A stretch of 64,000 nt of DNA from Macrostomum lignano (GCA_002269645.1 NIVC01001520.1:1-64000), one strand, 5' to 3'; positions 1-53,000 are shown, numbered from the stretch's first letter. Made by a program: numbers and translations. The notes: a model not told the origin generated them from the sequence alone.

Positions 1-1292
1 TTGAATGGTTGTAACATTACTACGACAGGAGAGCGTTCTGCTACATAGAACAGTGCCTTGAGCATTTTCTAAGAGACACGTCTGTATCGAAGAAATTGCT
101 TCTTATCTATGACGTTGGTAAGTGCATCTTTTGCATACTATGTCCGTATAATTTAGCGGGATCAAAATAAAGTACATACATTTTTCTCACATCTCACTGC
201 AGGCTGCCGCGTTTCAGCTCGCGTACAATCCGCAGTTACTAATCTGGTGCTAACGTACAGGCCTCTTCATGTGCCATCAATGCATTCCACGCACCTTGGC
301 CACAAACCAAGCTGCCAAAGAAGGTTCTCTGTGCGTGTCACTCCTGGAGCGGGCTTGTGTGATGGCGAGAAACACAGAGAGAGCTTGGGCACAACTTCGC
401 CATATGGGCATTCACTAAAGTACATGCGACCTGATCGTAGGAGCACCTGTATGTCTCAAATTCTGTTTCATTTCAATGCGAATCAATTGTTTAACACACG
501 CCCAGTGGTTCCAGCAACGTCTCAGACTTTTGGACAGTACGATAAAAAACATGTCTTCGGAAATGAACTCACTTCTTGATGATGCACGAATACAGCAAGC
601 TTCCGGAATTTTAGACGGAAGCTTAGTACTTTCGGAGTTCAAATTCGGAATCTCGGCCGTCAGTGGCATCAGAACTCTCTTATAGGCGCAGTAGAAAACT
701 CTGAAAACGACCTTCTATCTAATATTCGTTCGCTTGCAGTTCTCAGAGAACATTGGCTGCGACAGTCTGGACTAAATATGGGCCAAGGTCATAACAGAGC
801 TTGCTTGCGCCGTGTACAAGGTTTGACTTCAGAAATGAAAGCTGATATTAATCGTCTGCCGGAAGAGACCCGGGTTCTTTTGATCAGTATCGGAAGCCAA
901 ATAGTTCAAAGTACGATGGTTTATCTGAATCAGCTACTTCTGTCCGTTTCCGTCGGCGTGCAATCGATCTCTATCATAAGTACGACAGAGTGAATGAGGA
1001 ACTGCATATCGTATCTGAGGAATGGTATGACTTTATTGTAAAAATGGACATGGTTTGCAAGAGTCTAGATAATCAGGCTGGTTTGGCGGCTCAGTTTCGA
1101 AAACTATTTCGATCAATTTTAGAAAGAGTTGTAAATCTTGACGTTCCAGCAAGGGCAGAATATTTTCGACTCATTTTGGGCGGCGCAGAACAAAGCATTG
1201 AAAATGTTCCTCCTATTAGCAACGACTCGCCAACTGAGTCGGCGACTGAGTCTTCAGCGTCTGAATCGGATGATTCAGAAGATACTTTTTGA
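1..1292 (+). mobile_element. KDZ (Kyakuja-Dileera-Zisupton) transposase, C-terminal part; interrupted by about eight 1-nt frameshifts and an intron at 118-202; the 5' part lies outside the window
   Basis: Joining frames gives LNGCNITTTGER(F)CYIEQCLEHF...LLLIYDVGC, then CAINAFHA(L)GHKPSCQRRFSVRVTPGAGLCDGE, then TERAWAQLRH, GHSLKYMRPDRR, and later RAIDLYHKYDRVNEELHIVSEEW. This order (GE-x2-Y; YDxGC; FH-x2-H-x3-CQ; GxGxxDGE-x2-ER-x-W) matches the KDZ transposase core. Intron GTAAGT(118)...CTGCAG(202) keeps the YDV|GC frame. Confidence 0.8.
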
Positions 1293-1816
1293 GCAAGTTT
1301 AAATTTTTTAGTTAGCTGAACACTTCAATTACACAGTGATTTATTGTGTCGGCTGTTTCCAAAGCACTTGCAATAAAATTATTCAAAAATTGCTGTGCCA
1401 ATAGATGTCATTTTTAACCTCACTTGCACACAATAGCTCAAGTGTGCTGTGAATTCGCTGCTCAGCTGTATCATTCCTGGGTCCATGTGCTCTGCTTACA
1501 CGTAGCGGACCTGTTAACGTTAATTAATTCAGTTTAATGCAGTGATGAACTGTCACTCAGTTTATAAACTGGCGCTAAATTGTTTTGATTAACGGAGCCA
1601 AAGAGCACTTATTTATTTCGTTACCTTTTATACTACACTTCATTGCATGAAAATTAAACTGCCGTTAAGTTGACATTTTCGCCCGTTATGGTGTTATTAA
1701 ACGATATGTTGGTTGCTTTTTCTCATTTTTAAGTCGTCAATATTAGTTAGGACTCAGTTTTCGATCCCGATTGCCATTCTCAAATCCATAGAATCGACTC
1801 AAGACCCTAGCTGTAG
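1246..1816 (+). repeat. Direct repeat copy 1 (last ~47 nt of the transposase CDS, AATAAA at 1372-1377, and spacer)
   Basis: 1246-1798 reads identical to 3078-3630 (offset 1832); similarity continues to about 1816/3662. Confidence 0.95.
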
Positions 1817-2013
1817 TCCTAAGTTTTTAGTATCACAAAGATTTAGTACTCAATCAATCTGTCTTTCATGTCGACATGTGTCCACCTTTTTACAGATTTC
1901 TTATTGAAATCCGAAAGTGATTGTGTTATCTGAAACGAGTCGGCAAAAATCAATTAATTTACTCTTTTTGTGGTAATAATCTATCAATCTTTGGCTACGA
2001 TCACAAATCTACC

Positions 2014-3012
2014 ATGACGACTGAAAAGTACGAGTGCCCTCTGTGTCTTCCTGGTTTAAGTACCTATAGTGCTCGAGCTGATCGACTTCTTTTGCATGCA
2101 ACTAAAAAGCATGCTTTAGACGCTAAAAGAGCAAGTTGCATAATTCAATATCTTCGTTGGTCCAGAAAGTCAGATGTAAAATTATGCGCGCTATGTGATC
2201 AGTTTGCTGTAAATTTGCGAGATCACTACGCTAAATGTCATGCGGGCGATTACAGGCGTCTTAACTCCTTATTAACTGGACAACCAGCTATCAGGTTGGC
2301 GAGAAAACGTGCTCTGCGGCGATTCGGAGAACTGTACTGGTGTTTTATTGCCGACCAGCCTTTGCCACGGTATCCGGATTCAAGTTACGAGAACGAAAAA
2401 CAGGGATTGCACGAGAGGTGAGTAATGTTATTGCCTATCCTGCTTTTCAAGATTTGATCAGACATGTAAACGGTTGTATAAACCTAAAAATATCTTTGTA
2501 TATCCTCCCACAGAGAACAAGAGTCGCGGGCTGGTAAACAGTCTTGTCTCCGAATCTATACAAAAGCCTCAAAACTTCTTCCGGCAAAAGTTACAGTTCA
2601 GTTAGCGGGTGAGAAGGGTTATGGACTGTTTTCTGATGAGAATATCAAGGCGAAGTCATTCGTCTGTTTCTATGGTGGAGCAGTTTTATCCAAAAAAGAA
2701 GGGGCGGCTAGGGAAGAAAAGCGATCTCGCGAAGGAGATTCGCCCGCATTCGCCTTTTTCTATTTTTATGGTTCAAAATCATTATGCGAAGACGCTACCC
2801 TCACTGATTCTGTAGGTCGCTATATTAATCATAGTCGACTGAACCCAAACTTGGTTCCTAGTGTCATATCACCTTGCAAAGACATTGGACGCCACACAAG
2901 CCGAATAGGATTTTTTGCATTACATAATATTCCCAAGGGAATTGAGTTGCTTTATGATTATGGTGAACGAGATGAAGAGTGTTTGCAAAAGTTTCCGTGG
3001 CTAAACTCTTAA
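2014..3012 (+). CDS. C2H2-like zinc-finger + SET-domain lysine methyltransferase, PR-Set7/SETD8-like; exons 2014-2417 and 2514-3012; 300 aa
   Basis: Exon 1: MTTEKYECPLCLPG...HATKKH and CALCDQFAVNLRDHYAKCH. Phase-2 intron GTGAGT(2418)...CCACAG(2513) joins in frame. Exon 2: GEKGYGLF...FVCFYGG...CEDAT...VGRYINHSRLNPN...ELLYDYGERDEECLQKFPWLNS*. The NHS, ELLYDYG and terminal PWL motifs are SET8-family hallmarks. The ORF track missed exon 2 because it has no early start codon. Confidence 0.88.
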
Positions 3013-3077
3013 TTTTTTCGCATGTCGTTCGCACTGTCTACATTCCTAGGTTACTGTCCTTCGCACATCTGCTTTAC

Positions 3078-3662
3078 CTGAGTCTTCAGCGTCTGAATCG
3101 GATGATTCAGAAGATACTTTTTGAGCAAGTTTAAATTTTTTAGTTAGCTGAACACTTCAATTACACAGTGATTTATTGTGTCGGCTGTTTCCAAAGCACT
3201 TGCAATAAAATTATTCAAAAATTGCTGTGCCAATAGATGTCATTTTTAACCTCACTTGCACACAATAGCTCAAGTGTGCTGTGAATTCGCTGCTCAGCTG
3301 TATCATTCCTGGGTCCATGTGCTCTGCTTACACGTAGCGGACCTGTTAACGTTAATTAATTCAGTTTAATGCAGTGATGAACTGTCACTCAGTTTATAAA
3401 CTGGCGCTAAATTGTTTTGATTAACGGAGCCAAAGAGCACTTATTTATTTCGTTACCTTTTATACTACACTTCATTGCATGAAAATTAAACTGCCGTTAA
3501 GTTGACATTTTCGCCCGTTATGGTGTTATTAAACGATATGTTGGTTGCTTTTTCTCATTTTTAAGTCGTCAATATTAGTTAGGACTCAGTTTTCGATCCC
3601 GATTGCCATTCTCAAATCCATAGAATCGACACCTTAGAATCGACTTAAGACCCTAGCTGTAG
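3078..3662 (+). repeat. Direct repeat copy 2
   Basis: Starts 66 nt after the SET stop codon. Identical to 1246-1798, then a short TAGAATCGAC duplication. Confidence 0.95.
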
Positions 3663-4017
3663 GCCTAAACTTTGCGCTATCTATAAGAAGTCAGCATCGA
3701 ATACTTGATCAGTCTTGATGTCATACTTGATACGGACCCCTCAGCCAGGAGTGCTGTTATCTTTTCTCCAGGCCATTCAGTCATACTAATCTCTTTTTGT
3801 ATAATGGTACCCTATGGTTATTTAGTTATACTTACTAATATTATACAGTGCAACCCTGTCCCCATAATTCAATCAGCTTTAACTAGATGTAACTTTTGCT
3901 ACTGACTTTCTTCAGTTACTAAAAAAACAATGCTATACTTATTTCAGCTAGCCACTCGACGCATTGAAATTAAGTCTTCTAAAACACCAATCCAATTATT
4001 CAACAACTGTTTTAGCC

Positions 4018-4836
4018 ATGCCTAATAAACACGCAAAAATCTGTTGCTTTTTGTGCTCATGGACTGGTAGAACGTACCAATTGTGGCGACATCGGGAAAA
4101 GTTTCACCCTACCACAACTGATGAGCAGATTCAGGCCATGATTGATCTGTCTAAAGCCAATTCGAAGGCCAAGTCTGTGGCTCTCTGCCCTCTCTGCCAG
4201 GATATGATTTCTTGCCCTAGAATGCACTTTCGAAACAACCATGCTTCCGAATTTCAAACTCCAAGTCGTAGAAAAGACCTGGCAGGTCGGGCTGCTACTA
4301 AGCGAATGAGAAAACAAGCTTCCGTACGTCTGGCAGAGCTTCGCGACTTGGCAGTTGTAAAAGAAGTGCCCATCCACTATGCTCCATTCGATCAAGTAGT
4401 CCTGGACATTCAACATCTGGTTTATAATTACGAAATAAGCGAGACAGACAACGTTGCTCCACTCCGTGCAGCTTCACAACCTGTTGCAGCCTCAACTTCT
4501 ACTGCGGCATCTAGTCCTAAGCAATCTGATCGGCATTGCACATTTTCTGGGTGCAACTGTGGTGCACCAAGACTGCCTTGTGCTACATCAACAAAAGAAA
4601 TTGCCAATTGTATTCCTAGATGCTCACTAGGAAATTTAAAAAAATCTCCAGGAAAAAAATTCCCCGCTGCAATCGGCCCAGTTCCTATTCCTCTCAAGCC
4701 TAAAGCAATTGTTCCTCTCACAATAGTTCCACAACCCGTTATTCGCAGACGGAAATCGTCACATGAAGTTAAAGTAACTAAATTTGATCCAAACCTGGTG
4801 TCCTCTTCCCCAAAAAGCAATCGATTTGCTGATTAG
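4018..4836 (+). CDS. Double C2H2-like zinc-finger protein with a low-complexity Pro/Lys-rich tail (272 aa from ATG 4018)
   Basis: Open frame. CFLCSWTGRTYQLWRHREKFH and CPLCQDMISCPRMHFRNNH have the same two-finger layout as the N-terminus of the SET gene, followed by a basic helix. Confidence 0.65.
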   Translation: MPNKHAKICCFLCSWTGRTYQLWRHREKFHPTTTDEQIQAMIDLSKANSKAKSVALCPLCQDMISCPRMHFRNNHASEFQTPSRRKDLAGRAATKRMRKQASVRLAELRDLAVVKEVPIHYAPFDQVVLDIQHLVYNYEISETDNVAPLRAASQPVAASTSTAASSPKQSDRHCTFSGCNCGAPRLPCATSTKEIANCIPRCSLGNLKKSPGKKFPAAIGPVPIPLKPKAIVPLTIVPQPVIRRRKSSHEVKVTKFDPNLVSSSPKSNRFAD

Positions 4837-4978
4837 ACCTTTTAATAGTCCTTGAACCCCGACCCCTTCTCCTACTCACTGTAATGGCAATCTCTGAGCG
4901 AGCAGAAATACAAAATTAATTTAACAGTTTATTCTCAAGCACTTGCAATCATTAAAATTATCGTATAAAGTGGTAATT

Positions 4979-5228
4979 AAAAATTGCTGTGCCAATAGAT
5001 GTCATTTTTAACCTCACTTGCACACAATAGCTCAAGTGTGCTGTGAATTCGCTGCTCAGCTGTATCATTCCTGGGTCCATGTGCTCTGCTTACACGTAGC
5101 GGACCTGTTAACGTTAATTAATTCAGTTTAATGCAGTGATGAACTGTCACTCAGTTTATAAACTGGCGCTAAACTGTTTTGATTAATGGAGCCAAAGAGC
5201 ACTTATTTATTTCGTTACCTTTTATACT
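4979..5228 (+). repeat. Direct repeat copy 3 (partial)
   Basis: Matches 1385-1634 with about two substitutions (AAACTG/AAATTG; TTAATGG/TTAACGG). Confidence 0.9.
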
Positions 5229-5589
5229 TTTGTTATTGATTATTTTTCAATCAGGTGTACTTCCATTTAGATCACTGTTTGTTGACAGTTTATCGTTCCA
5301 TTTTCTACTAAATACACGTTGTTATAATTAAGTTATAGTTTACTTTAACGACTTCATTGTGTATTGCATTTGTTTTCTTCTTTTACACACTTATTGCAAT
5401 GTTAACATTTGACAATGACTTATGATTTTACTTAGATTCGCCCGTCTAGATTTGCTCTTTTACAATTGCCCATCCAGAATCACCCTTTTTATCACACCCT
5501 CCTCCAGGTCATTCAGTCATGCTACTTTCACTGTGTATCTCTATTTTATGTCCTATCTACTCTTCTTTGTTGTATGACTCAATCATTAG

Positions 5590-5892
5590 TAATGTCCATC
5601 GCCGCGAAGCTGTTCAACCGGCTCCTGCTTACCCCGTTGCAGCCCGTGCTGGATCCCTACCTGCGGACCGAGCAGAACGGGTTCCGGCCAAGACGCGGCA
5701 CTGTTACGCAGATCCTGGCCCTTCGGTGAGTCATCGAGCAGGCGCGCACTCGGCGGTATCCGGACTGCCTGCTGGCCGATGCTGGCGCCCCCGACCAGGC
5801 CGGTGGACCGGCCTTTCTCCGCTCCCGTGCTCTGGGGCGCGACCTGTGATGCCCAACCTCGACCCTGGGGCGTAACTTGTTGTTGTTGTCAG
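5590..5892 (+). mobile_element. Non-LTR retrotransposon (RTE-like) reverse transcriptase remnant
   Basis: SIAAKLFNRLLL...DPYLRTEQNGFRPRRGTVTQILALR*VIEQA is the conserved LINE RT segment (Q-x-GFR). It has an in-frame stop and ends near a (TTG)n tract at about 5877-5890. Confidence 0.75.
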
Positions 5893-6591
5893 TCATTAGT
5901 CGCCAAGATTTCGCGCCATCTTGACATTTAGTGTTTAACAATGCCAATATGACAATGTCGATATGTAAACTGTAGCATACTTGATCCCTGATAAACCGTT
6001 TTGCATTCAACGCAACACTGATTTTTAGTATCTGTAAAATCGGTTCTTAAACTTCTTCCAATATTTTGTATCTGGAAATTTTCTATTTCTCATTCTATTC
6101 TATTACGTTCTATTCCATTGTATTCTAAGACATTCTATTTTCTATTTTTGCGGCAGGGGCGGCAGCTGCAGCACTAAAGTTAGCAGGTTCCATCTGGAAA
6201 AGAAATCGGACGTGTGAGTGGAAAAGGACCATTTCTTCGGGCCATCTTTAAAATATAATGATGAATTGCGACCTTACAACATTATGCTAGTGTATGTCCC
6301 TAAACTATAGTGCACATGTTTCGCTCATACTACTTTTAGTATCCTACTAGAGATCCTACTATCTACTATCTAACTACTACTAACTACTAACTAACTACTT
6401 TCCGGATATACGAGTTGTACAAAAAATGATGAATTAATAAAGATATACTACGCTCTAAAAGCAAAATGTTATTAGCTGCTAAGGGCCATTCAGTCATTTA
6501 TAAAAATAGACTATTTTATACCAGTTTTGTTACCATTTTCTTCAGTTTAAATTAAAGCTTGTAAGTGGAAATTTGTCTATATACAATGAGG

Positions 6592-6722
6592 CCTGTGGCG
6601 CAAAAATGAGTGGCTGCGGAGCTAAAAATGAGTGGCTGCGGAGCTAAAAATGAGTACCTGTGGCGCTAAAATGAGTGCCTGCGGCGCTAAAATGAGTACC
6701 TGCGGCGCTGAAATGAGTGCTG
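6592..6722. repeat. 21-22-bp minisatellite, about 6 copies
   Basis: Unit approximately AAAATGAGTACCTGCGGCGCT. Confidence 0.85.
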
Positions 6723-6976
6723 ACAACACGGATTCTGATAGTAATGTACGTGTAGGAATTTCGTCGTGTACATTTACATGTAGTAGAAATCTTGGCTTTG
6801 TCACCCACCATAAAATCCATGGCGACGAGCCTGAGTGCATAACTACAACACCGAGTTGCTTTAAATATGCATTTACGCGGCTATCATGTGCCAGCAGGGG
6901 CGCATCCAGAGGCTACAGGATGTTGCATGGGGCTCAGTAAAAATCGAGTTTCTTTTCTTAATTGTTGTAAAAGCAG

Positions 6977-9477
6977 AGAGCAGAGAAGTAGAAAGATCAA
7001 GGGATCTTTGAGTTGTGGGGTAAGTTTTGGAGATATATGGCACATGGCACCTTTTTCGAGATGCAAGATAGACTGCATGGTCTGGTCAGCTATCAATTTA
7101 TAAGGCATGAGAGTGGAACTGATGTGCAGGTATACCCAGCTTTTGCTAATGTTTTGCCAATTTCTTAATCTCAAGCTCAAATTCTTATTCCTGATTCCTC
7201 ACGTTGGGGTAAATATGAGATCAGAGTGCAGGCGAGGGGATAGAAAAGAATACATATAACATATCAGATACATCAAGTACATATTGAAAGATGAGAGAGA
7301 GATCGAGAGAAGATGACACGAGAGAAGAGTGCGTGCTATATAGTAAAGGAGAAATGAGAATTGAGAGCAGAGAAGTAGAAAGATCAAGAGATCTTTGAGT
7401 TATGGGGTAAGTTTTGGAGATATGTGGCACATGGCACCTTTTTCGAGATGCAAGATAGACTGCATGGTCTGGTCAGCTATCAATTTATAAGGCATGAGAG
7501 TGGAACTGATGTGCAGGTATACCCAGCTTTTGCTAATGTTTTGCCAATTTCTTAATCTCAAGCTCAAATTCTTATTCCTGATTCCTCACGTTGGGGTAAA
7601 TATGAGATCAGAGTGCAGGCGAGGGGATAGAAAAGAATACATATAACATATCAGATACATCAAGTACATATTGAAAGATGAGAGAGAGATCGAGAGAAGA
7701 TGACACGAGAGAAGAGTGCGTGCTATATAGTAAAGGAGAAATGAGAATTGAGAGCAGAGAAGTAGAAAGATCAAGAGATCTTTGAGTTATGGGGTAAGTT
7801 TTGGAGATATATGGCACATGGCACCTTTTTCGAGATGCAAGATAGACTGCATGGTCTGGTCAGCTATCAATTTATAAGGCATGAGAGTGGAACTGATGTG
7901 CAGGTATACCCAGCTTTTGCTAATGTTTTGCCAATTTCTTAATCTCAAGCTCAAATTCTTATTCCTGATTCCTCACGTTGGGGTAAATATGAGATCAGAG
8001 TGCAGGCGAGGAATAGAAAAGAATACATATAACATATCAGATACATCAAGTACATATTGAAAGATGAGAGAGAGATCGAGAGAAGATGACACGAGAGAAG
8101 AGTGCGTGCTATATAGTAAAGGAGAAATGAGAATTGAGAGCAGAGAAGTAGAAAGATCAAGAGATCTTTGAGTTATGGGGTAAGTTTTGGAGATATGTGG
8201 CACATGGCACCTTTTTCGAGATGCAAGATAGACTGCATGGTCTGGTCAGCTATCAATTTATAAGGCATGAGAGTGGAACTGATGTGCAGGTATACCCAGC
8301 TTTTGCTAATGTTTTGCCAATTTCTTAATCTCAAGCTCAAATTCTTATTCCTGATTCCTCACGTTGGGGTAAATATGAGATCAGAGTGCAGGCGAGGGGA
8401 TAGAAAAGAATACATATAACATATCAGATACATCAAGTACATATTGAAAGATGAGAGAGAGATCGAGAGAAGATGACACGAGAGAAGAGTGCGTGCTATA
8501 TAGTAAAGGAGAAATGAGAATTGAGAGCAGAGAAGTAGAAAGATCAAGAGATCTTTGAGTTATGGGGTAAGTTTTGGAGATATATGGCACATGGCACCTT
8601 TTTCGAGATGCAAGATAGACTGCATGGTCTGGTCAGCTATCAATTTATAAGGCATGAGAGTGGAACTGATGTGCAGGTATACCCAGCTTTTGCTAATGTT
8701 TTGCCAATTTCTTAATCTCAAGCTCAAATTCTTATTCCTGATTCCTCACGTTGGGGTAAATATGAGATCAGAGTGCAGGCGAGGGGATAGAAAAGAATAC
8801 ATATAACATATCAGATACATCAAGTACATATTGAAAGATGAGAGAGAGATCGAGAGAAGATGACACGAGAGAAGAGTGCGTGCTATATAGTAAAGGAGAA
8901 ATGAGAATTGAGAGCAGAGAAGTAGAAAGATCAAGAGATCTTTGAGTTGTGGGGTAAGTTTTGGAGATATATGGCACATGGCACCTTTTTCGAGATGCAA
9001 GATAGACTGCATGGTCTGGTCAGCTATCAATTTATAAGGCATGAGAGTGGAACTGATGTGCAGGTATACCCAGCTTTTGCTAATGTTTTGCCAATTTCTT
9101 AATCTCAAGCTCAAATTCTTATTCCTGATTCCTCACGTTGGGGTAAATATGAGATCAGAGTGCAGGCGAGGGGATAGAAAAGAATACATATAACATATCA
9201 GATACATCAAGTACATATTGAAAGATGAGAGAGAGATCGAGAGAAGATGACACGAGAGAAGAGTGCGTGCTATATAGTAAAGGAGAAATGAGAATTGAGA
9301 GCAGAGAAGTAGAAAGATCAAGAGATCTTTGAGTTATGGGGTAAGTTTTGGAGATATATGGCACATGGCACCTTTTTCGAGATGCAAGATAGACTGCATG
9401 GTCTGGTCAGCTATCAATTTATAAGGCATGAGAGTGGAACTGATGTGCAGGTATACCCAGCTTTTGCTAATGTTTTG
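6977..9477. repeat. 387-bp tandem repeat, about 6.5 near-identical copies
   Basis: AGAGCAGAGAAGTAGAAAGATCAAG recurs every 386-387 nt; the ORF track repeats the same peptides at this period. Confidence 0.97.
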
Positions 9478-9577
9478 GTATGTCATAGTATTCTGGTCAT
9501 AGTATTCTGGTCATAGTATTCTGGTCATAGTATTCTGGTCATAGTATTCTGGTCATTGTATTCTGGTCATTGTATTC
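9478..9577. repeat. 14-bp minisatellite (GGTCATAGTATTCT)n
   Basis: About 7 direct copies. Confidence 0.9.
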
Positions 9578-10147
9578 ATCAAAAGTGCGTAGGAAAAAGC
9601 CAGCTATAAAATGGATGGACTTGAAGCCGCAGACTCCGGAAAAGTTTAACCCGTGTTCCAATCAGCAGCTGACCATTGCCGGATGAGCGCACACAGTTCT
9701 AGCCATAAAAACACGGGAATGCCACACAAGACCAAGTTCTGAGTGCGCAGAACCTCACATGTCGGCGGCATGCACTTCAGGCGTCCACGGTTTTGCTGCC
9801 GATTGTGCACCAAGTTTTCGGTGGCCACGCTGATGTGGCTGACGCTTGTCTCGGCTTGCCGTCTGTTGGTTCTGCCGCCGAAGGCGGAGAAGACGCCCGC
9901 TGCGGTAACGCCGCTGATGCTCACGACGAAGCTGACGACGACTTCTTGGCCGACGCCGATGACGACAGTGTCGAAGAAGACAGCGACAACGAAAGGATCA
10001 GCGCCTGCAAGAACAACTGACGGCGGCGACCGACGATGGAGACGGCGGAGGCGGCGGCCGCGACCGCAGTTGCTTGAAAAGTCTTCTGGAATCGGACTGA
10101 CTGGCGTCAATAGTGGGGTTTATTGGGTTGTCGTGTGATGGTGCGCC

Positions 10148-10498: not shown

Positions 10499-11764
10499 AG
10501 CAGCTAAATAAGTAATGAACTAATTCTAAATCAAATAAGCTCAATCCTAACTAATGATAAACTAATGTTTAAAAATACATTTGACAGCACATCGACATAT
10601 AAATCATACATATGGATTGGGGACACACTCGACATTGTTTCTTTTAATTGTCATCATCGATTTGATAACTTTTTTAATGCTCATGTACTCATCATTAATA
10701 TGCTCAGACTGTATAAAATAGAAAAAGGTACACATATTCCTTGCATGCAATATTTCTTGTCATGCCAATCGGTTCATTGCATGCTGTTTCTTATTACAAT
10801 ACACATATATACGGTCAATATATCGTAGTCATTTCACGTCTGTTCATTTCATTTTACGAGCTCGTAATCAAAACAGTTTGTTCACGCTAATACACAGTTT
10901 TCCGGAATTAGTTCCGCCGGCCGGACCTGTTCACCGTGGCCAGCAGTCGTTGGTCGGCCTCCCCAGTTTTGAAGCGTCTATCCGTCCCAGGCGCCTTTTT
11001 TGCCCAAGCGCCGCCGCTGAAGTCACCCCAAGGCGACCTTTTCGATCTGGGCGTCCCGGACAGGAGGTGGCCTCGCGAGTCCGCTATAGGCCTACTGCCG
11101 CCGGACCTGGCAGCTGGCATCTTTGGATGGAAAAATATTCCGGGTTTGATTATAACGTAAATTATCGAAATCCGTGAAATCTGTAAAACAGGCGCATTGT
11201 TAACTACCTTTGGTGGAGGCTTTGTCAGTATAGGCCTGTACCTTGGCTGATAGGCGTGCTCGTACTAAAATTTTTCGAGATTAAAGTCTTCATAATCAAA
11301 AGTTAAATAGAAAATAGAAATAGAAGATTTAAGTAGGTATTTAGGTTTACCTGATTAGCTGAATAGTTGGCTGCCATTCTCGTTGCAGCACTCTGCTTTT
11401 CAATACAAAACGTTCACGTACTGCACTGTACTCGTTTGCAAAGCAAACGCACGGCGAACTAAAGAGCAGACTGACTATTTACATTTTTAAACTAAGATGA
11501 AAGTTTTTTCCTTTAAAGAAAAGTCAATTAACTGCATTTAACTGGTTACCATAGAAACTGTCGTGATATTTTGTTTTACTTTGTATTTTGTTTAAACGGT
11601 AGCGTTAAAAGAAATAGGCACTGATTTAAAATCTGAGGCATGAAACTGTTTGCCGATTTAAGCTTATCTGGCGATTGCAATAACAGTGTTCATTGAGCCA
11701 CACAATCTTTGATTAATATTCTATGAATAGCTGTAACATACGCTGCGGCAGAAAAACATTCTCC

Positions 11765-30263
<18,499 letters not shown>

Positions 30264-30354: not shown

Positions 30355-33300
30355 AAATTATGAGAATGATGATCAGAATGATGGGAATGAGGATCAGGAT
30401 GAAGATGGGAATGAGGATCAGGATGAAGGTGGGAATGAGGATCAGGATGAAGATGGGAATGAGGATCATGATGAGGATGGGAATGAGGATCATGATGAGG
30501 ATGGGAGTGAGGATCATGATGATGATGGGAATGAGGATCAGGATGAGGATGAGGATGGGAGTGAGGATCAGGATGAAGATGGGAATGAGGATCGGGATGA
30601 GGATGGGGATGAGAATTAGGATGAACATGGGAATGAGGATCAGGATGAAGAAGGGAATGAGGATCATGATGAGGATGGGAGTGAGGATCATGATGATGAT
30701 GGGAATGAGGATCATGATGAGGATGAGGATGGGAGTGAGGATCCAGGATGAAGATGGGAATGAGGATCGGGATGAGGATGGGGATGAGAATTAGGATGAA
30801 CATGGGAATGAGGATCAGGATGAAGATGGGAATGAGGATCAGGATGAAGATGGGAATGAGGATCAGGATGAAGATGGGAATGAGGATCAGGATGAAGAAG
30901 GGAATGAGGATCATGATGAGGATGGGAGTGAGGATCATGATGATGATGGGAATGAGGATCAGGATGAGGATGAGGATGGGAGTGAGGATCCAGGATGAAG
31001 ATGGGAATGAGGATCGGGATGAGGATGGGGATGAGAATCAGGATGAAGATGGGAATGAGGATCATGATGAGGATGGGAGTGAGGATCAGGAAGAGGATGA
31101 ACATGGGAATGAGGATCAGGATGAAGATGGGAATGAGGATCAGGATGAAGATGGGAATGAGGATCAGGATGAAGATGGGAATGAGGATTAGGATGAGGAT
31201 GGGAATGAGGATCAGGATCAGGATGAGGATGGGAGTGAGGATCCAGGATGAAGATGGGAATGAGGATCGGGATGAGGATGGGGATGAGAATCAGGATGAA
31301 CATGGGAATGGGGGTCAGGATGAAGATGGGAATGAGGATCAGGATGAGGATGGGAATAAGGATTATGATTCAGATATAGAATTTTAGGATTGGGAGATAG
31401 ATGTGAGAATGAGGATCAGGATGTTGATTGGGATGAGGGTCAGGATGATGATGGGCATGAGGATCAGGATGAAGATGGGAATGAGGATCAGGATGAAGAT
31501 GGGAATGAGGATCATGATGAGGATGGGAGTGAGGATCATGATGATGATGGGAATGAGGATCAGGATGAGGATGAGGATGGGAGTGAGGATCCAGGATGAA
31601 GATGGGAATGAGGATCGGGATGAGGATGGGGATGAGAATTAGGATGAACATGGGAATGAGGATCATGATGAGGATGGGAGTGAGGATCAGGATGAGGATG
31701 AACATGGGAGTGAGGATCATGATGAGGATGGGAATGAGGATCAGGATGAAGATGGGAATGAGGATCATGATGAGGATGGGAGTGAGGATCATGATGATGA
31801 TGGGAATGAGGATCAGGATGAGGATGAGGATGGGAGTGAGGATCCAGGATGAAGATGGGAATGAGGATCGGGATGAGGATGGGGATGAGAATTAGGATGA
31901 ACATGGGAATGAGGATCAGGATGAAGATGGGAATGAGGATCAGGATGAAGATGGGAATGAGGATCAGGATGAAGATGGGAATGAGGATCAGGATGAAGAA
32001 GGGAATGAGGATCATGATGAGGATGGGAGTGAGGATCATGATGATGATGGGAATGAGGATCAGGATGAGGATGAGGATGGGAGTGAGGATCCAGGATGAA
32101 GATGGGAATGAGGATCGGGATGAGGATGGGGATGAGAATCAGGATGAAGATGGGAATGAGGATCATGATGAGGATGGGAGTGAGGATCAGGATGAGGATG
32201 AACATGGGAATGAGGATCAGGATGAAGATGGGAATGAGGATCAGGATGAAGATGGGAATGAGGATCAGGATGAAGATGGGAATGAGGATTAGGATGAGGA
32301 TGGGAATGAGGATCAGGATCAGGATGAGGATGGGAGTGAGGATCCAGGATGAAGATGGGAATGAGGATCGGGATGAGGATGGGGATGAGAATCAGGATGA
32401 ACATGGGAATGGGGGTCAGGATGAAGATGGGAATGAGGATCAGGATGAGGATGGGAATAAGGATTATGATTCAGATATAGAATTTTAGGATTGGGAGATA
32501 GATGTGAGAATGAGGATCAGGATGTTGATTGGGATGAGGGTCAGGATGATGATGGGCATGAGGATCAGGATGAAGATGGGAATGAGGATCAGGATGAAGA
32601 TGGGAATGAGGATCATGATGAGGATGGGAGTGAGGATCATGATGATGATGGGAATGAGGATCAGGATGAGGATGAGGATGGGAGTGAGGATCCAGGATGA
32701 AGATGGGAATGAGGATCGGGATGAGGATGGGGATGAGAATTAGGATGAACATGGGAATGAGGATCACGATGAAGATGGGAATGAGGATCATGATGAGGAT
32801 GGGAGTGAGGATCATGATGATGATGGGAATGAGGATCAGGATGAGGATGAGGATGGGAGTGAGGATCCAGGATGAAGATGGGAATGAGGATCGGGATGAG
32901 GATGGGGATGAGAATCAGGATGAAGATGGGAATGAGGATCATGATGAGGATGGGAGTGAGGATCAGGATGAGGATGAACATGGGAATGAGGATCAGGATG
33001 AAGATGGAATGAGGATCAGGATGAAGATGGGAATGAGGATCAGGATGAAGATGGGAATGAGGATTAGGATGAGGATGGGAATGAGGATCAGGATCAGGAT
33101 GAGGATGGGAGTGAGGATCCAGGATGAAGATGGGAATGAGGATCGGGATGAGGATGGGGATGAGAATCAGGATGAACATGGGAATGGGGGTCAGGATGAA
33201 GATGGGAATGAGGATCAGGATGAGGATGGGAATAAGGATTATGATTCAGATATAGAATTTTAGGATTGGGAGAAAGATGTGAGAATGAGGATCAGGATGT

Positions 33301-33720
33301 TGATTAGGATGAGGGTCAGGATGATGATGGGCATGAGGATCAGGATGAAGATGGGAATGAGGATCAGGATGAAGATGGGAATGAGGATCAGGATGAAGAT
33401 GGGAATGAGGATCAGGATGATGCTGAGAGTAAGGATTATCGTTCAGATATATAATTTTAGGATTGGGAGAAAGATGTGAGAATGAGGATCATGATGTTGA
33501 TGGGGATGAGGATCAAGATAATGATGGGGATGAGGATCAAGATAATGATGGGCATGAGGATCAGGATGAAGATGGGAATGAGGATCAGGATGATGCTGAG
33601 AATAAGGATCCGGACGATGGGAATGAAGATCAGGATGATGATGAGAATAAGGATTATGGTTCAGATATATAATTTTAGGATTGGGAGAAAGATGTGAGAA
33701 TGAGGATCAGAATATAGATG
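30355..33720. repeat. GATGAG/GGGAATGAGGATCAG-rich satellite with a 1101-bp higher-order duplication
   Basis: Identical ORF peptides recur at +1101 (30748/31849, 30959/32060, 31370/32471). The punctuation motif CAGATATAGAATTTTAGGATTGGGAG recurs about five times. Confidence 0.95.
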
Positions 33721-38879: not shown

Positions 38880-39350
38880 TTACACCTTCGGCCCGGCCTG
38901 CACCTTCTTGATGAAGTCCTCGTACTTGACGTTGCCGTCGAGGTCTTCGTGCGTGTCGGTGAACTTCATAATCACGTCGACGTCGCTGTCGTCAAGCCGT
39001 TCGCCGTAGCTGGTGAGCACGTGGCGCAGCTCGGCGGCCGAGATGTAGCCCTGGCCTTCGCGATCGAACGTCTTGAAGGCCTCCATGAAATCGGCGAAGG
39101 TGCCCTCCTCCTTGGCCTTCATGACCTCCTGGTAGATCGGCAGGAACTCCTCGAACTTGTAGCCCTTCTCGCCCATCTTCTCCGTGCCGCCGTGCTTCAG
39201 GCAGGTGGCGATGGTCGGGTTCATGCCGACGCAGCGCAGCAGGTCGGCCACCTTGGCGGCGTCGACCTCGCCGTCGCGGCCGTCCCAGAAGTCGAATAGG
39301 TCGAAAACTTCGCGAATATCCTCGATTTCGCCTTTGCTTAGTCCGGCCAT
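38880..39350 (-). CDS. Myosin essential light chain (EF-hand), intronless CDS, 156 aa
   Basis: [34 protein letters not shown]...FEEFLPIY...[25 protein letters not shown]...[19 protein letters not shown] at 39350 (the ORF track extends the frame upstream). Confidence 0.95.
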
Positions 39351-40189
39351 GTCTAAACTATTCGGGGGAAAAACGGTTGCTGAGGGCTGGGGCGAAGGAC
39401 AAGAGAGCAGCGGTCTGTCTGCCTGGTGGGTCGGTCGAAATAGCGCGAGCGGTCGTGCGGCCTTTTCCCTGGGCAGCCGGGCACGGGGCTTTTTTATCCT
39501 TTTCTCCTTTCGGCCACCGCTGCTGCTGCTGCCCCAAGCCGAGCCATCCTGGCCGCCAATCGATCGAATCTCCCCCTGCTGCACATCCTGCGTTCGCTGC
39601 GTGCGCTGGAATGCAGGCAGGTACGGAGAAACCTAGCTAAGGGGGTTGGCAAATCTTCAAATTAAAATGGCGCGGCCTTCAGACTCTGTCGGGCAGGGGC
39701 TCGTGAAGGACGGGGCGGTTGCCAGGGGGTTGCCTGGCTGTGCAGCTGGACTGCAGGATCAGGGCGGGCCTTGGTAGACAGCTGAATGAAACAGAGAGAA
39801 GGAATCCTATATAGACCGAAATGCCACTGCATTCGATAGTTACTGGGAAGGGAAGGGAATAGAAACCCAGGTGTACTTGCGCTTCCTCTGTCTGTGCAGT
39901 CCGAACACACAGACATGAGGTGTACAAGCCGCATGAAGTCTTTTTCTATCCAGGAAACTTTTCTAAGATTTACTTATTTAGCTAATTTAATTAATTCGTT
40001 TCGATGAGAACTAGCACCGTTTTATTTTATGAGCCTTGCAAGGATTCTTCATTCATGAGGGCGTCGTTTCACTGTCGTTTCACGTAGTGCCACTGTCGGA
40101 ATGATAGCGTCGTTTTCTGTATGATGATGCCATTTTGTGTACGACGGTGCCATTTTCCTTATGATGGTTCCATTTTTTGTATGACGGTG

Positions 40190-50014: not shown

Positions 50015-53000
50015 ATGAAATTTGCTGAACATCTCCAAGCTCACCTTACACCAGAGTGGCGAACTCAATATATAAAATATGATGTAATTTTTATTTAAGC
50101 TTCTGATTTTTTATGATTACTGTAACTTAGCTTTTTAATATTAAATTTAATTGGTTTCAGGATCTCAAGGAATTTCTATACAAGTGTGCAAATGAAATTT
50201 CTGAAGAACTAGGTAAAGTAGTTATTGTCTGTCATAATTTTACAGAGTTGTGTCATATAAAACTACCTTCGAAGTATCAACCTTTCACTCATGCACTCCC
50301 AGATGAGGAAACCCGCCAAGCCTACTTCATATCCAAAGACGAAGAATTCTACAACGTGTGCAACGACGAGCTTATCAAAATCAACGACTTCTTTGAAGAG
50401 AAAGTAGCGGAGGCCAAGCGCCGGTTAAAAGACTTGGAGCAGGAGCTGGCCGAGTACAAACAGTTCAAGCAGCAGCTGGCAACTCAGAAGCTCCAGGCTA
50501 ACGGCGTCGACGCTGTGCTGCCAGGCGCCATGATTCGCCGGTACCGCGACATGAAGAAGCACCGCGGCCGGGTTCGCAAACTCCAAGAGATCAAATTGGC
50601 CTTCCAGGAGTTCTATTTGAACCTCATACTGTTGCAGAACTATCAGGCATTGAATTTCACCGGATTTAGAAAGATACTTAAGAAACATGATAAGGTAAGA
50701 TATTACTCCTTCTCCCACACCCAGTCCCGCTCTCCTATTCCCCTTTCCCAATCTCCCTCTCCCAGTCTTCCTCTTCCAGTCTACCACTTTCAATCTCCCT
50801 TTCCCCTCTCCCAGTCTCCATCTCCCTCTCCCAGTCACCCTCTCCCATTTCCCTCTCCCAGTCTTCCTCTTCCAATCTCCCTCTCCCAGTCTCCCTCATC
50901 CAATCTCCCTCACCCAGTCACCCTCTCCCAGCCTCCCTCTCCCACTCCATTCTCTCATCCATCCATCTCCTAACCTCCCTCTCCCAATCTCCTTCTCCGA
51001 TATCTATATCCCGGTCTCAATCTCCCTTATTCGAAAGAAAAATTTTGCTTTAAAAATTTGTGAGTAAAATCTATATAAAAATAAATAATTGAATAAATAA
51101 AATCCTGATATGGTACAAAAAGCCAGGTTTTGGGTAGGTGTTTTAGAATTATGAATAATAGCTTAATTAGCTAATCTGATGCTTCTTTGTCAATACTCTC
51201 TGCTCTCTTATCTCATTTCTTATCCACGCCTCGATCCCATTAGTTAAAATAGTATAATCTGCGCTATATAATGACAGCCATTACATAGTCACACTCATAA
51301 GTTCTTTGTTAGTATTACACAAGAAAAACTGTCAAGTACTCGTGTGTTGCCAATCGGGGAAATGCTGTTTCCTGTTCTTCTTCTGCGGCAGCAAGCCAAT
51401 GGCATGCAGTAGCACTGGTACTTCTTTACTTTCCTGGATCTTTTCAGAGCCGTTGTTTTGTGCTTTACTAATTAAGTTAAATCTATACTGGAGGCATTTG
51501 GGTATTTTTAGGTCAGCTGGCATCACGAATCCGTGTTTTGACTTAGCTATTTGATAGGCTAGCTAATGTCAAGCACGACTGTTGAAAAGTACACAGGGGT
51601 TTCCACGCCTGATTCAATTTCACTTTTGCTCTCTTTTCTTCTTTTTTTAGAGGCTAGAGCGGAGAAAATGAAGGGGTGAGAGAAGGGAAAGGGAATGGGT
51701 GAGAGTATGGAGAGGGAAGGGCTGAGAAGAGGGAGAGAGAAGGGCTGAGAGGAGGGAGAGGGAAGAGCTGAGAGGAGGGAGAGGGAAGGGCTGAGAGGAA
51801 GGAGAGGGAAGGGCTGAGAGGAAGGAGAGGGAAGGGCTGAGAGGAAGGAGAGGGAAGGGCTGAGGGTATGGAGAGGAAGAGCTGAGAGGAGGGAGAGAGA
51901 AGGGCTGAGAGTATGGAGAGGGAAGAGCTGAGAGGAAGGAGAGAGGAGGGCTGAGAGTATGGAGAGGGAAGAGCTGAGAGGAGGGAGAGAGAAGGGCTGA
52001 GAGTATGGAGAGGGAAGAGCTGAGAGGAGGGAGAGAGGAGGGCTGAGAGTATGGAGAGGGAAGAGCTGAGAGGAGGGAGAGAGAAGGGCTGAGAGTATGG
52101 AGAGGGAAGAGCTGAGAGGAAGGAGAGAGGAGGGCTGAGAGTATGTAGAGGGAAGAGCTGAGAGGAGGGAGAGAGAAGGGCTGAGAGTATGGAGAGGGAA
52201 GAGCTGAGAGGAGGGAGAGGGAAGGGCTGAGAGGAGGGAGAGGGAAGGGCTGAGAGGAGGGAGAGGGAAGGGCTGAGAGGAGGGAGAGGGAAGGGCTGAG
52301 AGGAGGGAGAGGGAAGGGCTGAGAGGAGGGAGAGGGAAGGGCTGAGAGGAGGGAGAGGGAAGGGCTGAGAGGAGGGAGAGGGAAGAGCTGAGAGGAGGGA
52401 GAGGGAAGGGCTGAGAGGAGGGAGAGGGAAGAGCTGAGAGGAGGGAGAGGGAAGAGCTGAGAGGAGGGAGAGGGAAGGGCTGAGAGGAGGGAGAGGGAAG
52501 AGCTGAGAGGAGGGAGAGGGAAAAAAGAGGGTAAAAAAGAGGGAACAGTGGAATCATATATAACATGTTAACAGCCAATAAAGCTTGCCGCATTGTGTAA
52601 CTATTTACTACAATTGAATATGCCTAATATTGCTGGCACTCCCTGCCACTCCGCCAGATATTCGGACTCTCATCCGGCTATCAGTGGCGCGTTAGAAACG
52701 TAGAATCGGCCAGATTCAATGTCAGCAAAGACGTGGCGGAGTTTATCGACCGAGTTGAACAGGTGTACATTGGCGACTTGGAGCGGGGCGACCGGCACAC
52801 GGCTATGAAGCGGCTGAGGGTGCCGCCACTTACTGAGAGGGTAATTTACTAGTTACCTGAATAGTTTTGTTGCAGTAAAGTACAATTGAAGTTCGTTAAA
52901 AGTAAAGTAGATCAACAGCGTCACAGGGTCTCCCTTACCCAGTCTCCCTCACTCTGTCTCCCTCACCCAGTCTCCCTTACCCAGTCTCCCTCACCCAGTC

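What the first reader, a model, noticed from the sequence alone, without database searches (positions are those of the whole stretch)
1..5228. KDZ transposon apparently carrying a PR-Set7/SETD8-like histone methyltransferase
Seen: a KDZ transposase remnant is followed, co-oriented and within 0.7 kb, by an intact spliced ZF-SET gene and a second ZF gene. All three are tied together by repeats that include the transposase's own 3' end. Established: fungal KDZ transposons are linked to TET/JBP DNA-modifying genes, and SET8 enzymes methylate H4K20. Inference: this is an animal KDZ element with chromatin-writer cargo that could mark its own copies or target sites (anti-silencing or targeting). I do not recall this association being described, but I could not check the literature.
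Basis: partly seen in the sequence, partly recalled or inferred. Interest (0 to 1): 0.88.

Follow-up and report, generated by a model that had tools for sequence, protein, structure and literature searches.

The report
Flatworm KDZ transposon carrying SET8-like gene
A young, multi-copy KDZ "cut-and-paste" transposon of the flatworm Macrostomum lignano carries, besides its transposase, a zinc-finger protein fused to a SET8-like lysine methyltransferase and a second zinc-finger protein. A second, diverged family of the element keeps the same three genes, so this mobile element appears to bring its own chromatin-writing enzyme.

Summary
The window starts at a contig start, inside a KDZ transposase gene of Macrostomum lignano. 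The "remnant" look comes from that truncation plus eight single-base indels unique to this copy. Eight other copies agree with each other at those sites, and the C103 copy encodes an intact 808-aa, two-exon KDZ transposase (Pfam KDZ E=1.6e-31).

Downstream lie an intact spliced ZF-SET gene (300 aa, annotated Mlig001681g4) and a ZF-only paralogue. Each of the three genes is followed by the same 3' module, R.

The block is a mobile element:
- at least 14 near-identical 5' ends;
- one sharp 5' terminus (CAGTTTATGG...) next to six different flanks;
- shorter relatives that share the backbone on both sides of the genes.

A second family (transposase 56% identical, SET about 40%) has the same three genes on at least 9 contigs.

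The SET domain is closest to SET8/KMT5A in sequence and predicted fold, and its conserved motifs are intact. It is not the host orthologue, which lies elsewhere (55-56% identical to human).

The 3' terminus and target-site duplication were not found, and function is untested. SET genes in transposons and TET/JBP genes in KDZ elements are known. I found no report of KDZ with a SET8-like gene in an animal.

The parts
1..117 (+). End of KDZ transposase exon 1. The gene is cut by the contig start; about 1.2 kb of exon 1 lies outside the window in other copies.
   Evidence: The C103 copy continues upstream as a 445-codon exon 1. The window lacks one G at w35 relative to 9 other copies.
118..202 (+). 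KDZ intron (GT...AG)
   Evidence: Read from the sequence. Splicing gives a continuous KDZ domain and equals annotated protein Mlig001681g7.
203..1292 (+). KDZ transposase exon 2 (stop at 1290-1292). In the window it carries seven of the eight copy-specific 1-nt indels; the eighth is in exon 1.
   Evidence: The intact 808-aa protein from the C103 copy matches Pfam KDZ 3-216/217 at E=1.6e-31.
1246..1822 (+). R1: shared 3' module. It holds the last 47 nt of the KDZ CDS, a 3'UTR with AATAAA at 1372-1377, and an intergenic stretch.
   Evidence: 553/553 identical to R2.
2014..2417 (+). ZF-SET exon 1: two C2H2-like fingers (CxxC-x16-HxxxxH and CxxC-x9-HxxxxH)
   Evidence: Homologous to the ZF2 N-terminus.
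2514..3012 (+). ZF-SET exon 2: SET8-like SET domain ending in FPWLNS, then the stop codon
   Evidence: Pfam SET E=2.5e-16. Best PDB matches are SETD8/KMT5A. AF2 model pLDDT is mostly >90 over about residues 160-300; TM 0.79-0.80 to human SET8.
3078..3668 (+). R2: second copy of the 3' module, after ZF-SET
   Evidence: An R1/R2 recombinant copy without ZF-SET exists at C1431:70000-73465.
4018..4836 (+). ZF2: 272-aa protein with the same double-finger module and no SET domain
   Evidence: Five 100%-identical copies, and 33%-identical homologues inside family B elements.
4975..5228 (+). R3: partial third copy of the 3' module, after ZF2
   Evidence: 98.8% identical to R1/R2.
5226..5315 (+). Backbone block shared (85-90%) with a shorter, gene-less relative family that has the same 5' terminus
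5316..6975 (+). 3' backbone region 'X', identical in all copies read. It includes an RT-like ORF piece at about 5436-5729; the RT assignment is by eye only.
   Evidence: Partial homology in the short family. Pfam found nothing in the RT-like ORF.
6976..9477 (+). 387-bp satellite array (6.5 units) belonging to the repeated unit. The window copy departs from the other copies at 9477/9478.
   Evidence: From w9482 onward there are 93% homeologues on C274 and C1346, where no element match was reported.

Best explanation
The window holds the 3' two-thirds of one copy of a recently amplified, autonomous KDZ-superfamily DNA transposon of Macrostomum lignano. About 21 kb of the element were traced.

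Anatomy, 5' to 3':
- a sharp 5' terminus, CAGTTTATGG..., with three ~25-nt subterminal direct repeats;
- a 5-6 kb array of a 20-bp motif;
- a spacer;
- a two-exon gene for an 808-aa KDZ transposase;
- two accessory genes;
- a 3' backbone with a 387-bp satellite.

The accessory proteins share an N-terminal module of two C2H2-like fingers. ZF-SET adds a C-terminal SET8/KMT5A-like lysine methyltransferase domain with intact conserved motifs. ZF2 is the finger module alone. Each of the three genes ends in the same 3'UTR/terminator module, R. Recombination between R copies can remove a cassette, and perhaps reorder the genes.

Shown: the gene models, the multi-copy state, the 5' terminus with different flanks, retention of the gene trio in a second diverged family, and non-orthology to the host SETD8.

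Inferred mechanism: the shared finger module binds repeated motifs of the element (the 20-bp array or the subterminal repeats) or its target DNA. ZF-SET would then methylate nucleosomes there, most likely H4K20me1, or a protein at the transposition complex. This would tune the element's own chromatin state, or the repair of transposition breaks. ZF2 would act as the non-catalytic DNA-binding partner or competitor.
For: Organism and gene models:
- P0001 is 100% identical to Mlig001681g4/g17.
- The KDZ model is 100% identical to Mlig001681g7.

Intact transposase:
- Pfam KDZ E=1.6e-31, full length.
- Nine copies other than the window show no substitutions over 1.3 kb; the only differences are 1-nt indels in contig-end copies.

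Mobility:
- w1-5300 occurs at about 100% identity on at least 10 contigs.
- The 4 kb upstream is 100% identical in at least 8 copies.
- There are 14 5' termini at 99% or more, plus at least 14 at 96%.
- The boundary is identical, CAGTTTATGG, next to six unrelated flanks: C737/C176, C1431a, C1431b, C3965, C3704, C103a.
- Homeologous contigs C355/C3838 (91%) carry the C737 flank without the element.

Genes lie inside the element:
- Short relatives share the 5' terminus, the 20-bp array, block w5226-5315, region X and a sat387-like array, but lack the genes.

Conservation:
- Family B has a transposase (P0171) 56% identical, a SET about 40% identical and a ZF2 33% identical. It carries KDZ, ZF2-like and ZF-SET on the same strand within about 6 kb on 9 contigs.

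SET domain:
- The best sequence and fold matches are SET8; the top 16 Foldseek hits are SET8, at TM 0.79-0.80 and rmsd 1.4-1.5 A.
- All invariant and near-invariant columns of 48 homologues are present in this protein, including the RxxNHS and ELLYDYG motifs and the C-terminal PWL.

The host orthologue lies elsewhere: three loci at 55-56% identity to human SETD8, against 33% for ZF-SET.

R variant: the C1431a copy lacks ZF-SET exactly between R1 and R2.
Against: - No 3' terminus, TIR or target-site duplication was found.
- The copies end their 387-bp array differently. The window joins unique DNA; C103 and C737 run into an inverted duplication.
- 'Inside the termini' therefore rests on backbone homology and conservation, not on two mapped ends.
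- M. lignano has hidden polyploidy, and the assembly holds near-identical duplicate contigs. Copy counts overstate independent insertions; C737 and C176 share one flank.
- ZF-SET paralogues exist on contigs with no detected KDZ (C1811/C3652, C12, C349 and others). Other KDZ families have no detected SET.
- No direct expression, DNA-binding or enzymatic evidence was available.
- The finger region is modelled at low confidence (pLDDT 32-65).
Confidence: 0.72

Rival explanations
1. Passenger capture. ZF-SET and ZF2 are host genes of a lineage-specific expanded family. A KDZ element picked them up, as in transduplication, and they do nothing for it.
For: ZF-SET paralogues sit on contigs with no detected KDZ. 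Many KDZ families lack SET. R-flanked cassettes suggest easy gain and loss.
Against: Two element families with only 56% transposase identity both keep open ZF-SET and ZF2 genes. In family A the SET motifs are intact. Pure passengers normally decay or are lost over that divergence. Gene order differs between the families, yet the gene content is kept.
Confidence: 0.15
2. Not a transposon unit. The near-identical copies are haplotigs, homeologues or segmental duplications of one locus where a KDZ gene happens to sit beside ZF-SET.
For: The genome is a hidden polyploid with many duplicated contigs. Many copies sit at contig ends. C737 and C176 share a flank. The downstream structure is complex and satellite-rich. 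No TSD or 3' end was found.
Against: Six unrelated 5' flanks abut the same base. Homeologues lack the element. Related gene-less elements with the same terminus lie at more than 14 further places. A second family repeats the gene trio on 9 contigs. Homeologous DNA here differs by 7-12%, while the copies show no substitutions in the stretch aligned.
Confidence: 0.05
3. Same element, different job for the SET. The enzyme acts on a non-histone substrate or on the DNA-damage response rather than marking element chromatin. For example, it could methylate the transposase or p53/PCNA-type targets, or promote H4K20me-dependent end joining at excision and insertion breaks.
For: From established knowledge: SETD8 methylates p53 and PCNA as well as H4K20, and H4K20 methylation recruits 53BP1. 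The SET domain of SETMAR supports end joining (PMC4593633, abstract seen). The fold and motifs are SET8-like.
Against: A DNA-binding finger module, shared with a second element protein, points to a DNA-tethered activity. No data bear on substrates.
Confidence: 0.2
4. ZF-SET is simply the host's SETD8/PR-Set7 gene next to a transposon.
For: Best PDB matches are SETD8.
Against: Three other loci (C550, C757, C1007) are 55-56% identical to human SETD8 (E=1e-40). ZF-SET is 33% identical to human and 35% to those loci. ZF-SET is multi-copy and linked to KDZ.
Confidence: 0.01

Closest known systems
Fungal KDZ (Kyakuja/Dileera/Zisupton) transposons carrying TET/JBP dioxygenase genes (PMC12730594 and the work it cites)
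   Same: A KDZ-domain transposase plus an accessory gene for an enzyme that writes or edits an epigenetic mark. The 5'-CA start and lack of TIRs resemble Kyakuja-1/2_LB as described in that paper.
   Different: The host is an animal (flatworm). The cargo is a SET8-like protein lysine methyltransferase fused to zinc fingers, plus a ZF-only paralogue, not a DNA-base dioxygenase. No TET/JBP match was found in the proteins scanned. The Kyakuja 7-bp TSD and ...TG 3' end could not be verified.
SET-encoding DNA transposons: HarbingerS and Phytophthora MuDR families (Kojima & Jurka 2014, cited in PMC12730594)
   Same: A DNA transposon that has incorporated a SET histone methyltransferase gene as a separate gene.
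   Different: Different transposase superfamily (KDZ, not Harbinger or MuDR). The SET type here is SET8-like, with an N-terminal double finger. A ZF-only paralogue accompanies it. I could not read the Repbase Reports, so their SET subtypes are unknown to me.
Human SETD8/KMT5A (PR-Set7), the H4K20 monomethyltransferase
   Same: Closest sequence and fold match. The SET domain lies at the extreme C-terminus and ends in PWL. The RxxNHS and ELLYDYG motifs are conserved.
   Different: Only 33% identical. It is not the host orthologue. The N-terminus is a double zinc finger rather than the SETD8 N-terminal region. Substrate is unknown.
SETMAR/Metnase (primate SET-mariner fusion)
   Same: A SET methyltransferase and a DNA-transposase domain linked in one genetic unit.
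   Different: SETMAR is a host gene that captured a dead transposase. Here a live transposon carries the SET as a separate gene. The SET clade and the transposase superfamily both differ.
Two-protein DNA transposons with subterminal repeat arrays (En/Spm TnpA/TnpD; VANDAL VANC anti-silencing factors). Comparison from my own knowledge; VANDAL is also mentioned in PMC12730594.
   Same: An accessory element-encoded protein besides the transposase, arrays of short repeats near the end, and a proposed role in controlling the element's own epigenetic state.
   Different: No sequence relationship. Binding of ZF2 or ZF-SET to the 20-bp array is only inferred.

Membership tests
KDZ (Kyakuja-Dileera-Zisupton) DNA transposons | Transposase with the KDZ domain (Pfam PF18758) | tested here: met
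   The 808-aa protein from the C103 copy scores E=1.6e-31, 110 bits, over profile positions 3-216/217. The window fragment alone scores E=6e-7.
KDZ (Kyakuja-Dileera-Zisupton) DNA transposons | N-terminal cysteine cluster (CxC domains) associated with KDZ transposases | tested here: inconclusive
   CxC1 scores E=0.005, 17 bits, below the cut-off. There is B-box-like Cys/His clustering at residues 112-149.
KDZ (Kyakuja-Dileera-Zisupton) DNA transposons | Repeated unit with a defined terminus next to unrelated flanks | tested here: met
   Met for the 5' end: the same first base has six different flanks, and there are 14 + 14 copies. The 3' end was not located.
KDZ (Kyakuja-Dileera-Zisupton) DNA transposons | Target-site duplication (8 bp in Zisupton, 7 bp in Kyakuja-1/2_LB; PMC12730594) | tested here: inconclusive
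   With no 3' end, searches for flank 7-9-mers downstream found nothing.
KDZ (Kyakuja-Dileera-Zisupton) DNA transposons | Termini: TIRs (Zisupton), or 5'-CA..TG-3' without TIRs (Kyakuja-1/2_LB) | tested here: inconclusive
   The element starts with 5'-CAG. No inverted copy of the terminus was found in the window or near other copies. This fits the Kyakuja-like pattern and not the Zisupton pattern, but the 3' ...TG is unverified.
SETD8/KMT5A (PR-Set7) H4K20 monomethyltransferases | SET fold closest to SET8, with the domain at the C-terminal end of the protein | tested here: met
   phmmer's best hits are SETD8 (E=4e-13, aligned to the last residue). The top 16 Foldseek hits are SET8, at TM 0.79-0.80.
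SETD8/KMT5A (PR-Set7) H4K20 monomethyltransferases | Cofactor and catalytic motifs (GxG, RxxNHS, ELxYDYG tyrosines, C-terminal PWL) | tested here: met
   G170, G172, Y188, R237, N240, H241, S242, E279, D283, Y284, P296, W297 and L298 are all present and lie in invariant or near-invariant columns of 48 homologues. G285 completes the ELLYDYG motif and was near-invariant in the 29-sequence alignment. See also the alignment to human SETD8.
SETD8/KMT5A (PR-Set7) H4K20 monomethyltransferases | Orthology to the host's SETD8 gene | tested here: not met
   The host has three loci 55-56% identical to human SETD8 (E=1e-40). ZF-SET is 33% identical to human and 35% to those loci. It is therefore SET8-like, not the SETD8 orthologue.
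SETD8/KMT5A (PR-Set7) H4K20 monomethyltransferases | Monomethylation of histone H4 lysine 20 on nucleosomes | not testable with these tools
   Needs an enzyme assay.
Transposon-borne SET genes (HarbingerS, Phytophthora MuDR) | SET gene lying within the mobile unit | tested here: inconclusive
   ZF-SET lies between backbone parts shared with gene-less relatives and is kept in two families. The 3' terminus is unmapped.
Transposon-borne SET genes (HarbingerS, Phytophthora MuDR) | Harbinger or MuDR transposase | tested here: not met
   The transposase is KDZ.
KDZ elements with TET/JBP cargo (fungi) | TET/JBP dioxygenase gene in the element | tested here: not met
   Pfam scans of the ORFs in w1-5228 and of the three proteins gave no TET/JBP match.

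The most novel reading that the evidence does not exclude
A lineage of animal DNA transposons encodes its own sequence-targeted histone H4K20 methyltransferase, together with a non-catalytic paralogue of its DNA-binding module. It uses them to write a chromatin mark on its own copies or insertion sites. That could control silencing, replication-coupled transposition or break repair. On this reading, the host's ZF-SET genes outside elements are domesticated descendants.
Probability: 0.3. Interest if true: 0.85.

Novelty: new variant of a known kind. Interest (0 to 1): 0.62.

Why it matters
Transposons that carry enzymes acting on epigenetic marks are rare and informative. Examples are TET/JBP in fungal KDZ and other elements, and SET in HarbingerS and oomycete MuDR. 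They show the element manipulating the host's silencing machinery rather than only suffering it.

This case differs in three ways:
- The cargo is a SET8-like enzyme fused to a DNA-binding module, with a ZF-only partner.
- The trio is kept in two diverged families of the element.
- The copies are so alike that the family looks recently active.

The host is also a tractable animal: published methods for M. lignano include transgenesis (PMC5730564). The idea that a transposon writes a histone mark for its own benefit could therefore be tested directly.

There is a practical point too. The element breaks the assembly at many places and has produced fused or chimeric gene models in public annotation (P0172, P0002).

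Tried and rejected
- TIR search. The reverse complement of the 5' terminus and its subterminal motif are absent from the window. No inverted terminus lies near other copies.
- 3' boundary by comparing copies. Copies stay identical to w9477, inside the 387-bp array, then differ. The short family also gave no boundary within 1.5 kb.
- 3' boundary by empty site. The homeologue of the C737 flank has an empty site. Its downstream flank maps to C103:597825-599209. That bounds the inserted material only to about 50-67 kb, and it is inconsistent with C103a's own 5' flank, so this stays unresolved.
- TSD searches with flank 7-9-mers, including a genome-wide pattern for the window's putative 3' flank, were all negative or on the wrong strand.
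G000 loci are not available to scripts. I therefore made no tree of M. lignano SET paralogues and no dN/dS estimate.
- Context of the nearest non-Macrostomum SET hit (P0003) is ordinary host genes with no KDZ. P0006 lies on a 1.7-kb contig from run SRR19430222 with nothing else on it.
- The AF2 model of the finger region is low-confidence, so I made no fold-based assignment of the ZF module.
- Rejected ideas: that ZF-SET is the host SETD8, and that the KDZ gene is a pseudogene.

Full report
**What is there.** The window is the first 64 kb of contig C1520 of a 764-Mb, 5,269-contig assembly. The organism is Macrostomum lignano: the spliced ZF-SET product is 100% identical to BOX15_Mlig001681g4/g17.
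- A KDZ match lies at w157-579.
- ZF-SET has two exons, w2014-2417 and w2514-3012, with a GT/AG intron.
- A second ZF gene, ZF2, lies at w4018-4836. Its N-terminus is homologous to that of ZF-SET (29% over 99 aa, E=2e-5).
- Three copies of a repeat, R, are present: R1 w1246-1822, R2 w3078-3668 and R3 w4975-5228. R1 and R2 are identical over 553 bp.
- R1 begins 47 nt before the transposase stop and contains AATAAA at w1372-1377. Each of the three genes is therefore followed by the same 3'UTR/terminator module.

**The transposase is not a remnant.** The contig starts inside the gene. I aligned w1-1300 with nine other copies. The window differs from eight of them only by eight single-base indels in its first ~880 nt, with no substitution. 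C176, which ends inside the element, has its own private indels. This is the pattern of consensus errors at contig ends. The C103 copy gives exon 1 (445 codons) and exon 2 (362 codons) without any stop. The 808-aa product matches Pfam KDZ over positions 3-216 of 217 at E=1.6e-31. It is 100% identical to the annotated protein Mlig001681g7.

**It is a mobile, multi-copy unit.**
- w1-5300 recurs at about 100% identity on C1431 (twice), C103, C3704, C737, C3965, C4421, C306, C176, C859 and C1155. Many of these sit at contig ends, so the repeat breaks the assembly.
- The 4 kb upstream of w1 is 100% identical in at least eight copies.
- About 11.3 kb upstream of w1 the copies share a sharp boundary, CAGTTTATGGCCGCCCGTTAGCGG.... 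Before it, six unrelated flanks were read: C737/C176, C1431a, C1431b, C3965, C3704 and C103a.
- Fourteen such termini exist at 99% identity or more, and at least fourteen more at 96%.
- Homeologous contigs C355 and C3838 (91% identical) carry the C737 flank without the element.
- The terminus holds three ~25-nt direct repeats and a 21-nt inverted repeat. It is followed by a 5-6 kb array of about 280 copies of a 20-bp motif.

**The genes lie inside the backbone.** The 96% family is short: 1.9-4.5 kb from its terminus to the homologue of w5221-5290. It lacks the three genes. It does share the terminus, the 20-bp array, block w5226-5315, parts of region X and a sat387-like array. This is the relation expected between an autonomous element and internally deleted relatives. 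Downstream of R3, all copies read stay identical through w6300. C103 and C737 stay identical to w9477, inside the 387-bp satellite.

**The 3' end is unresolved.** At w9477/9478 the window leaves the satellite for DNA that has 93% homeologues on C274 and C1346. No element match was reported on those contigs. In C103 and C737 the array runs on into a short unique centre and an inverted copy of region X plus satellite. No TIR and no TSD were found. Kojima (PMC12730594) reports that Kyakuja-1/2_LB have 5'-CA..TG-3' termini, no TIRs and 7-bp TSDs, and that Zisupton has TIRs and 8-bp TSDs. A 5'-CAG start without a TIR is compatible with the Kyakuja pattern. This is a resemblance, not a test that was passed.

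**The gene trio recurs in a second family.** A genome-wide protein search with ZF-SET found a set of loci with a 40-41% identical SET exon and a 41% identical ZF exon on C191, C910, C1892, C1944, C2504, C3083, C3192, C5220 and C4217.
- Each locus lies 3-5 kb downstream of, and on the same strand as, a KDZ gene.
- Each has a ZF2-like ORF (33% identical) between them. On C191, for example: KDZ 5668-6463, ZF2-like 8494-8832, ZF 9438-9722, SET 10953-11387.
- The transposase of this family B (P0171, Mlig022522g1) is 56% identical to that of family A. Its ZF-SET is Mlig022522g3.
- Gene order differs: KDZ-ZF2-ZFSET in family B, KDZ-ZFSET-ZF2 in family A. The gene content is the same.

Keeping three open genes across this divergence is the main argument that ZF-SET and ZF2 serve the element. 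Against a strict one-to-one link, other KDZ families have no detected SET, and other ZF-SET paralogues (C1811/C3652, C12, C349 and others) have no detected KDZ on their contigs. Genes have therefore moved between elements and host, in an unknown direction.

**What kind of SET.** The best PDB sequence matches are SETD8/KMT5A (E=4e-13), aligned through the last residue. A full HMMER scan of 1.84 billion representatives found 275 proteins at E<=1e-10. Most of the listed hits carry the SET domain at their extreme C-terminus, as SET8 does. An AlphaFold model from 48 homologues is confident over the SET domain (pLDDT mostly above 90 for about residues 160-300). Its top 16 Foldseek hits are SET8 structures (TM 0.79-0.80, rmsd 1.4-1.5 A). 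The finger region is poorly modelled. All invariant and near-invariant columns of that alignment are kept in this protein, including R237, N240-H241-S242, E279, D283-Y284 and P296-W297-L298.

The host's own SETD8 is elsewhere. C550, C757 and C1007 are 55-56% identical to the human SET domain (E=1e-40). ZF-SET is 33% identical to human and 35% to those loci. ZF-SET is therefore SET8-like in fold and motifs, but it is not the SETD8 orthologue.

**R repeats and variants.** R occurs only within this element family. The copy at C1431:70000-73465 has KDZ, one R, ZF2 and R3, with ZF-SET missing exactly between R1 and R2. This is the expected product of R1 x R2 recombination, or else the state before a cassette was inserted. 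The C737 copy carries a nested 4.8-kb LINE (RT and RNase H by Pfam, plus an upstream endonuclease-like ORF assigned by eye) in R2. In both families the annotation gives the transposase and ZF-SET the same Mlig cluster number. I infer that the shared, transcribed R sequence causes this. UniProt holds a fused KDZ+SET model for family B (P0172) and a chimeric model joining the array, the KDZ 5' region and ZF-SET exon 1 (P0002). These are predictions, not evidence of fusion proteins.

**How it probably works (inference).** The shared double-finger module suggests that both accessory proteins bind the same DNA. The obvious candidates are the element's own repeated motifs. ZF-SET would then methylate nearby nucleosomes, with H4K20me1 the default expectation from its SET8-like pocket. 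Alternatively it could methylate a protein in the transposition complex. ZF2 would act as partner or competitor. I cannot tell whether the outcome is anti-silencing, self-restraint, targeting or help with break repair. The repair or non-histone alternative is listed as a rival.

**Novelty.** Full-text searches found no paper linking KDZ elements with SET genes, and none describing KDZ elements in M. lignano. Kojima 2025 states that SET genes have been incorporated by HarbingerS and Phytophthora MuDR families, and that TET/JBP genes lie in KDZ and ten other lineages in fungi. The principle is therefore known. The combination here appears to be a new variant: a KDZ element, a SET8-like enzyme fused to fingers, a ZF-only paralogue, an animal host and retention in two families.

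**Limits.** The 3' terminus and TSD are missing. Copy numbers are inflated by polyploidy and duplicate contigs. No tree or selection test could be made, because further genome sequence could not be fetched. Nothing here bears directly on expression or activity.

Noticed in passing
window 1-880: Eight single-base indels are unique to this copy, at about w35, 242, 294, 370, 401, 500, 637 and 871, with no substitutions against eight other copies. These are probably consensus errors at the contig start. C176, which ends in the element, has its own set.
   Followed up: yes
window 6976-9477; L033:4100-4700 (C103): A 387-bp satellite (6.5 units, 99% alike) belongs to the repeated unit. In C103 and C737 the array runs into a ~250-bp centre and then an inverted copy of region X plus satellite (a large palindrome). 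The window instead joins unique DNA at 9477/9478.
   Followed up: partly
window 5436-5729 (+): A short ORF reads like the start of a non-LTR reverse transcriptase (…NGFRPRRGTVTQILALR), embedded in the element's 3' backbone. Pfam gave no significant match.
   Followed up: partly
window 56227-59898 (+): An uninterrupted 1,223-aa ORF of a Ty3/gypsy-type LTR retrotransposon pol (aspartyl protease, RT, RNase H, integrase). It lies between a 21-bp repeat array at 55672-55891 and the array at 60233-63833, which has the same repeat unit.
   Followed up: partly
window 38883-39632 (-) and 50131-50970 (+): Host-like exons: an EF-hand protein (resembling a myosin light chain by eye) and an SPX-domain protein. 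The DNA beyond w9478 therefore includes ordinary genes.
   Followed up: partly
window 12610-13023, 13717-14628, 23475-24472, 30380-33654, 52928-53693, 60233-63833 and others: The rest of the window is unusually rich in micro- and minisatellite arrays (periods 4-95 bp). The 21-bp array at 60233-63833 has 171 units.
   Followed up: no
L041:1-4800 (C737:14070-18872): A 4.8-kb non-LTR retrotransposon (RT and RNase H by Pfam; an upstream endonuclease-like ORF by eye) is nested in R2 of the C737 copy, with a short duplicated piece of the SET 3' end at the junction.
   Followed up: partly
proteins P0172 and P0002 (UniProt M. lignano models): P0172 fuses the family-B KDZ with ZF-SET in one 1,347-aa model. 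P0002 joins a translated 20-bp array, an alternative frame of the KDZ 5' end and the end of ZF-SET exon 1. These are either read-through or alternatively spliced transcripts, or annotation artefacts.
   Followed up: no
L024, L028, L023, L029, L030 (about 490 bp, columns ~95-585 of alignment A7): The short relatives carry a nested insertion bounded by inverted repeats CTCAGCAACATTGAAAAGTCGCCA / TGGCGACTTTTCGATGTTGCTGAG (MITE-like). It is absent from the window's family.
   Followed up: no
L032:100-215 (C103:648985-649078): A solo, 83%-identical copy of the 5'-terminal region of a related family lies about 200 bp outside the 5' end of the C103a copy. A second, short element starts 17 kb further up, at C103:666031.
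   Followed up: partly
C1149:88638-103888 and C3426:7195-23790: A KDZ fragment with an in-frame stop and a SET8-like ORF (about 41% identical to ZF-SET) lie on the same strand, 15-16 kb apart. This may be a third, older family, or coincidence.
   Followed up: no
C1811:266082-278909 and C3652:17649-30477: Two ZF-SET paralogues lie in tandem, about 11 kb apart, on contigs with no detected KDZ. They are candidates for host or domesticated members of the family.
   Followed up: no
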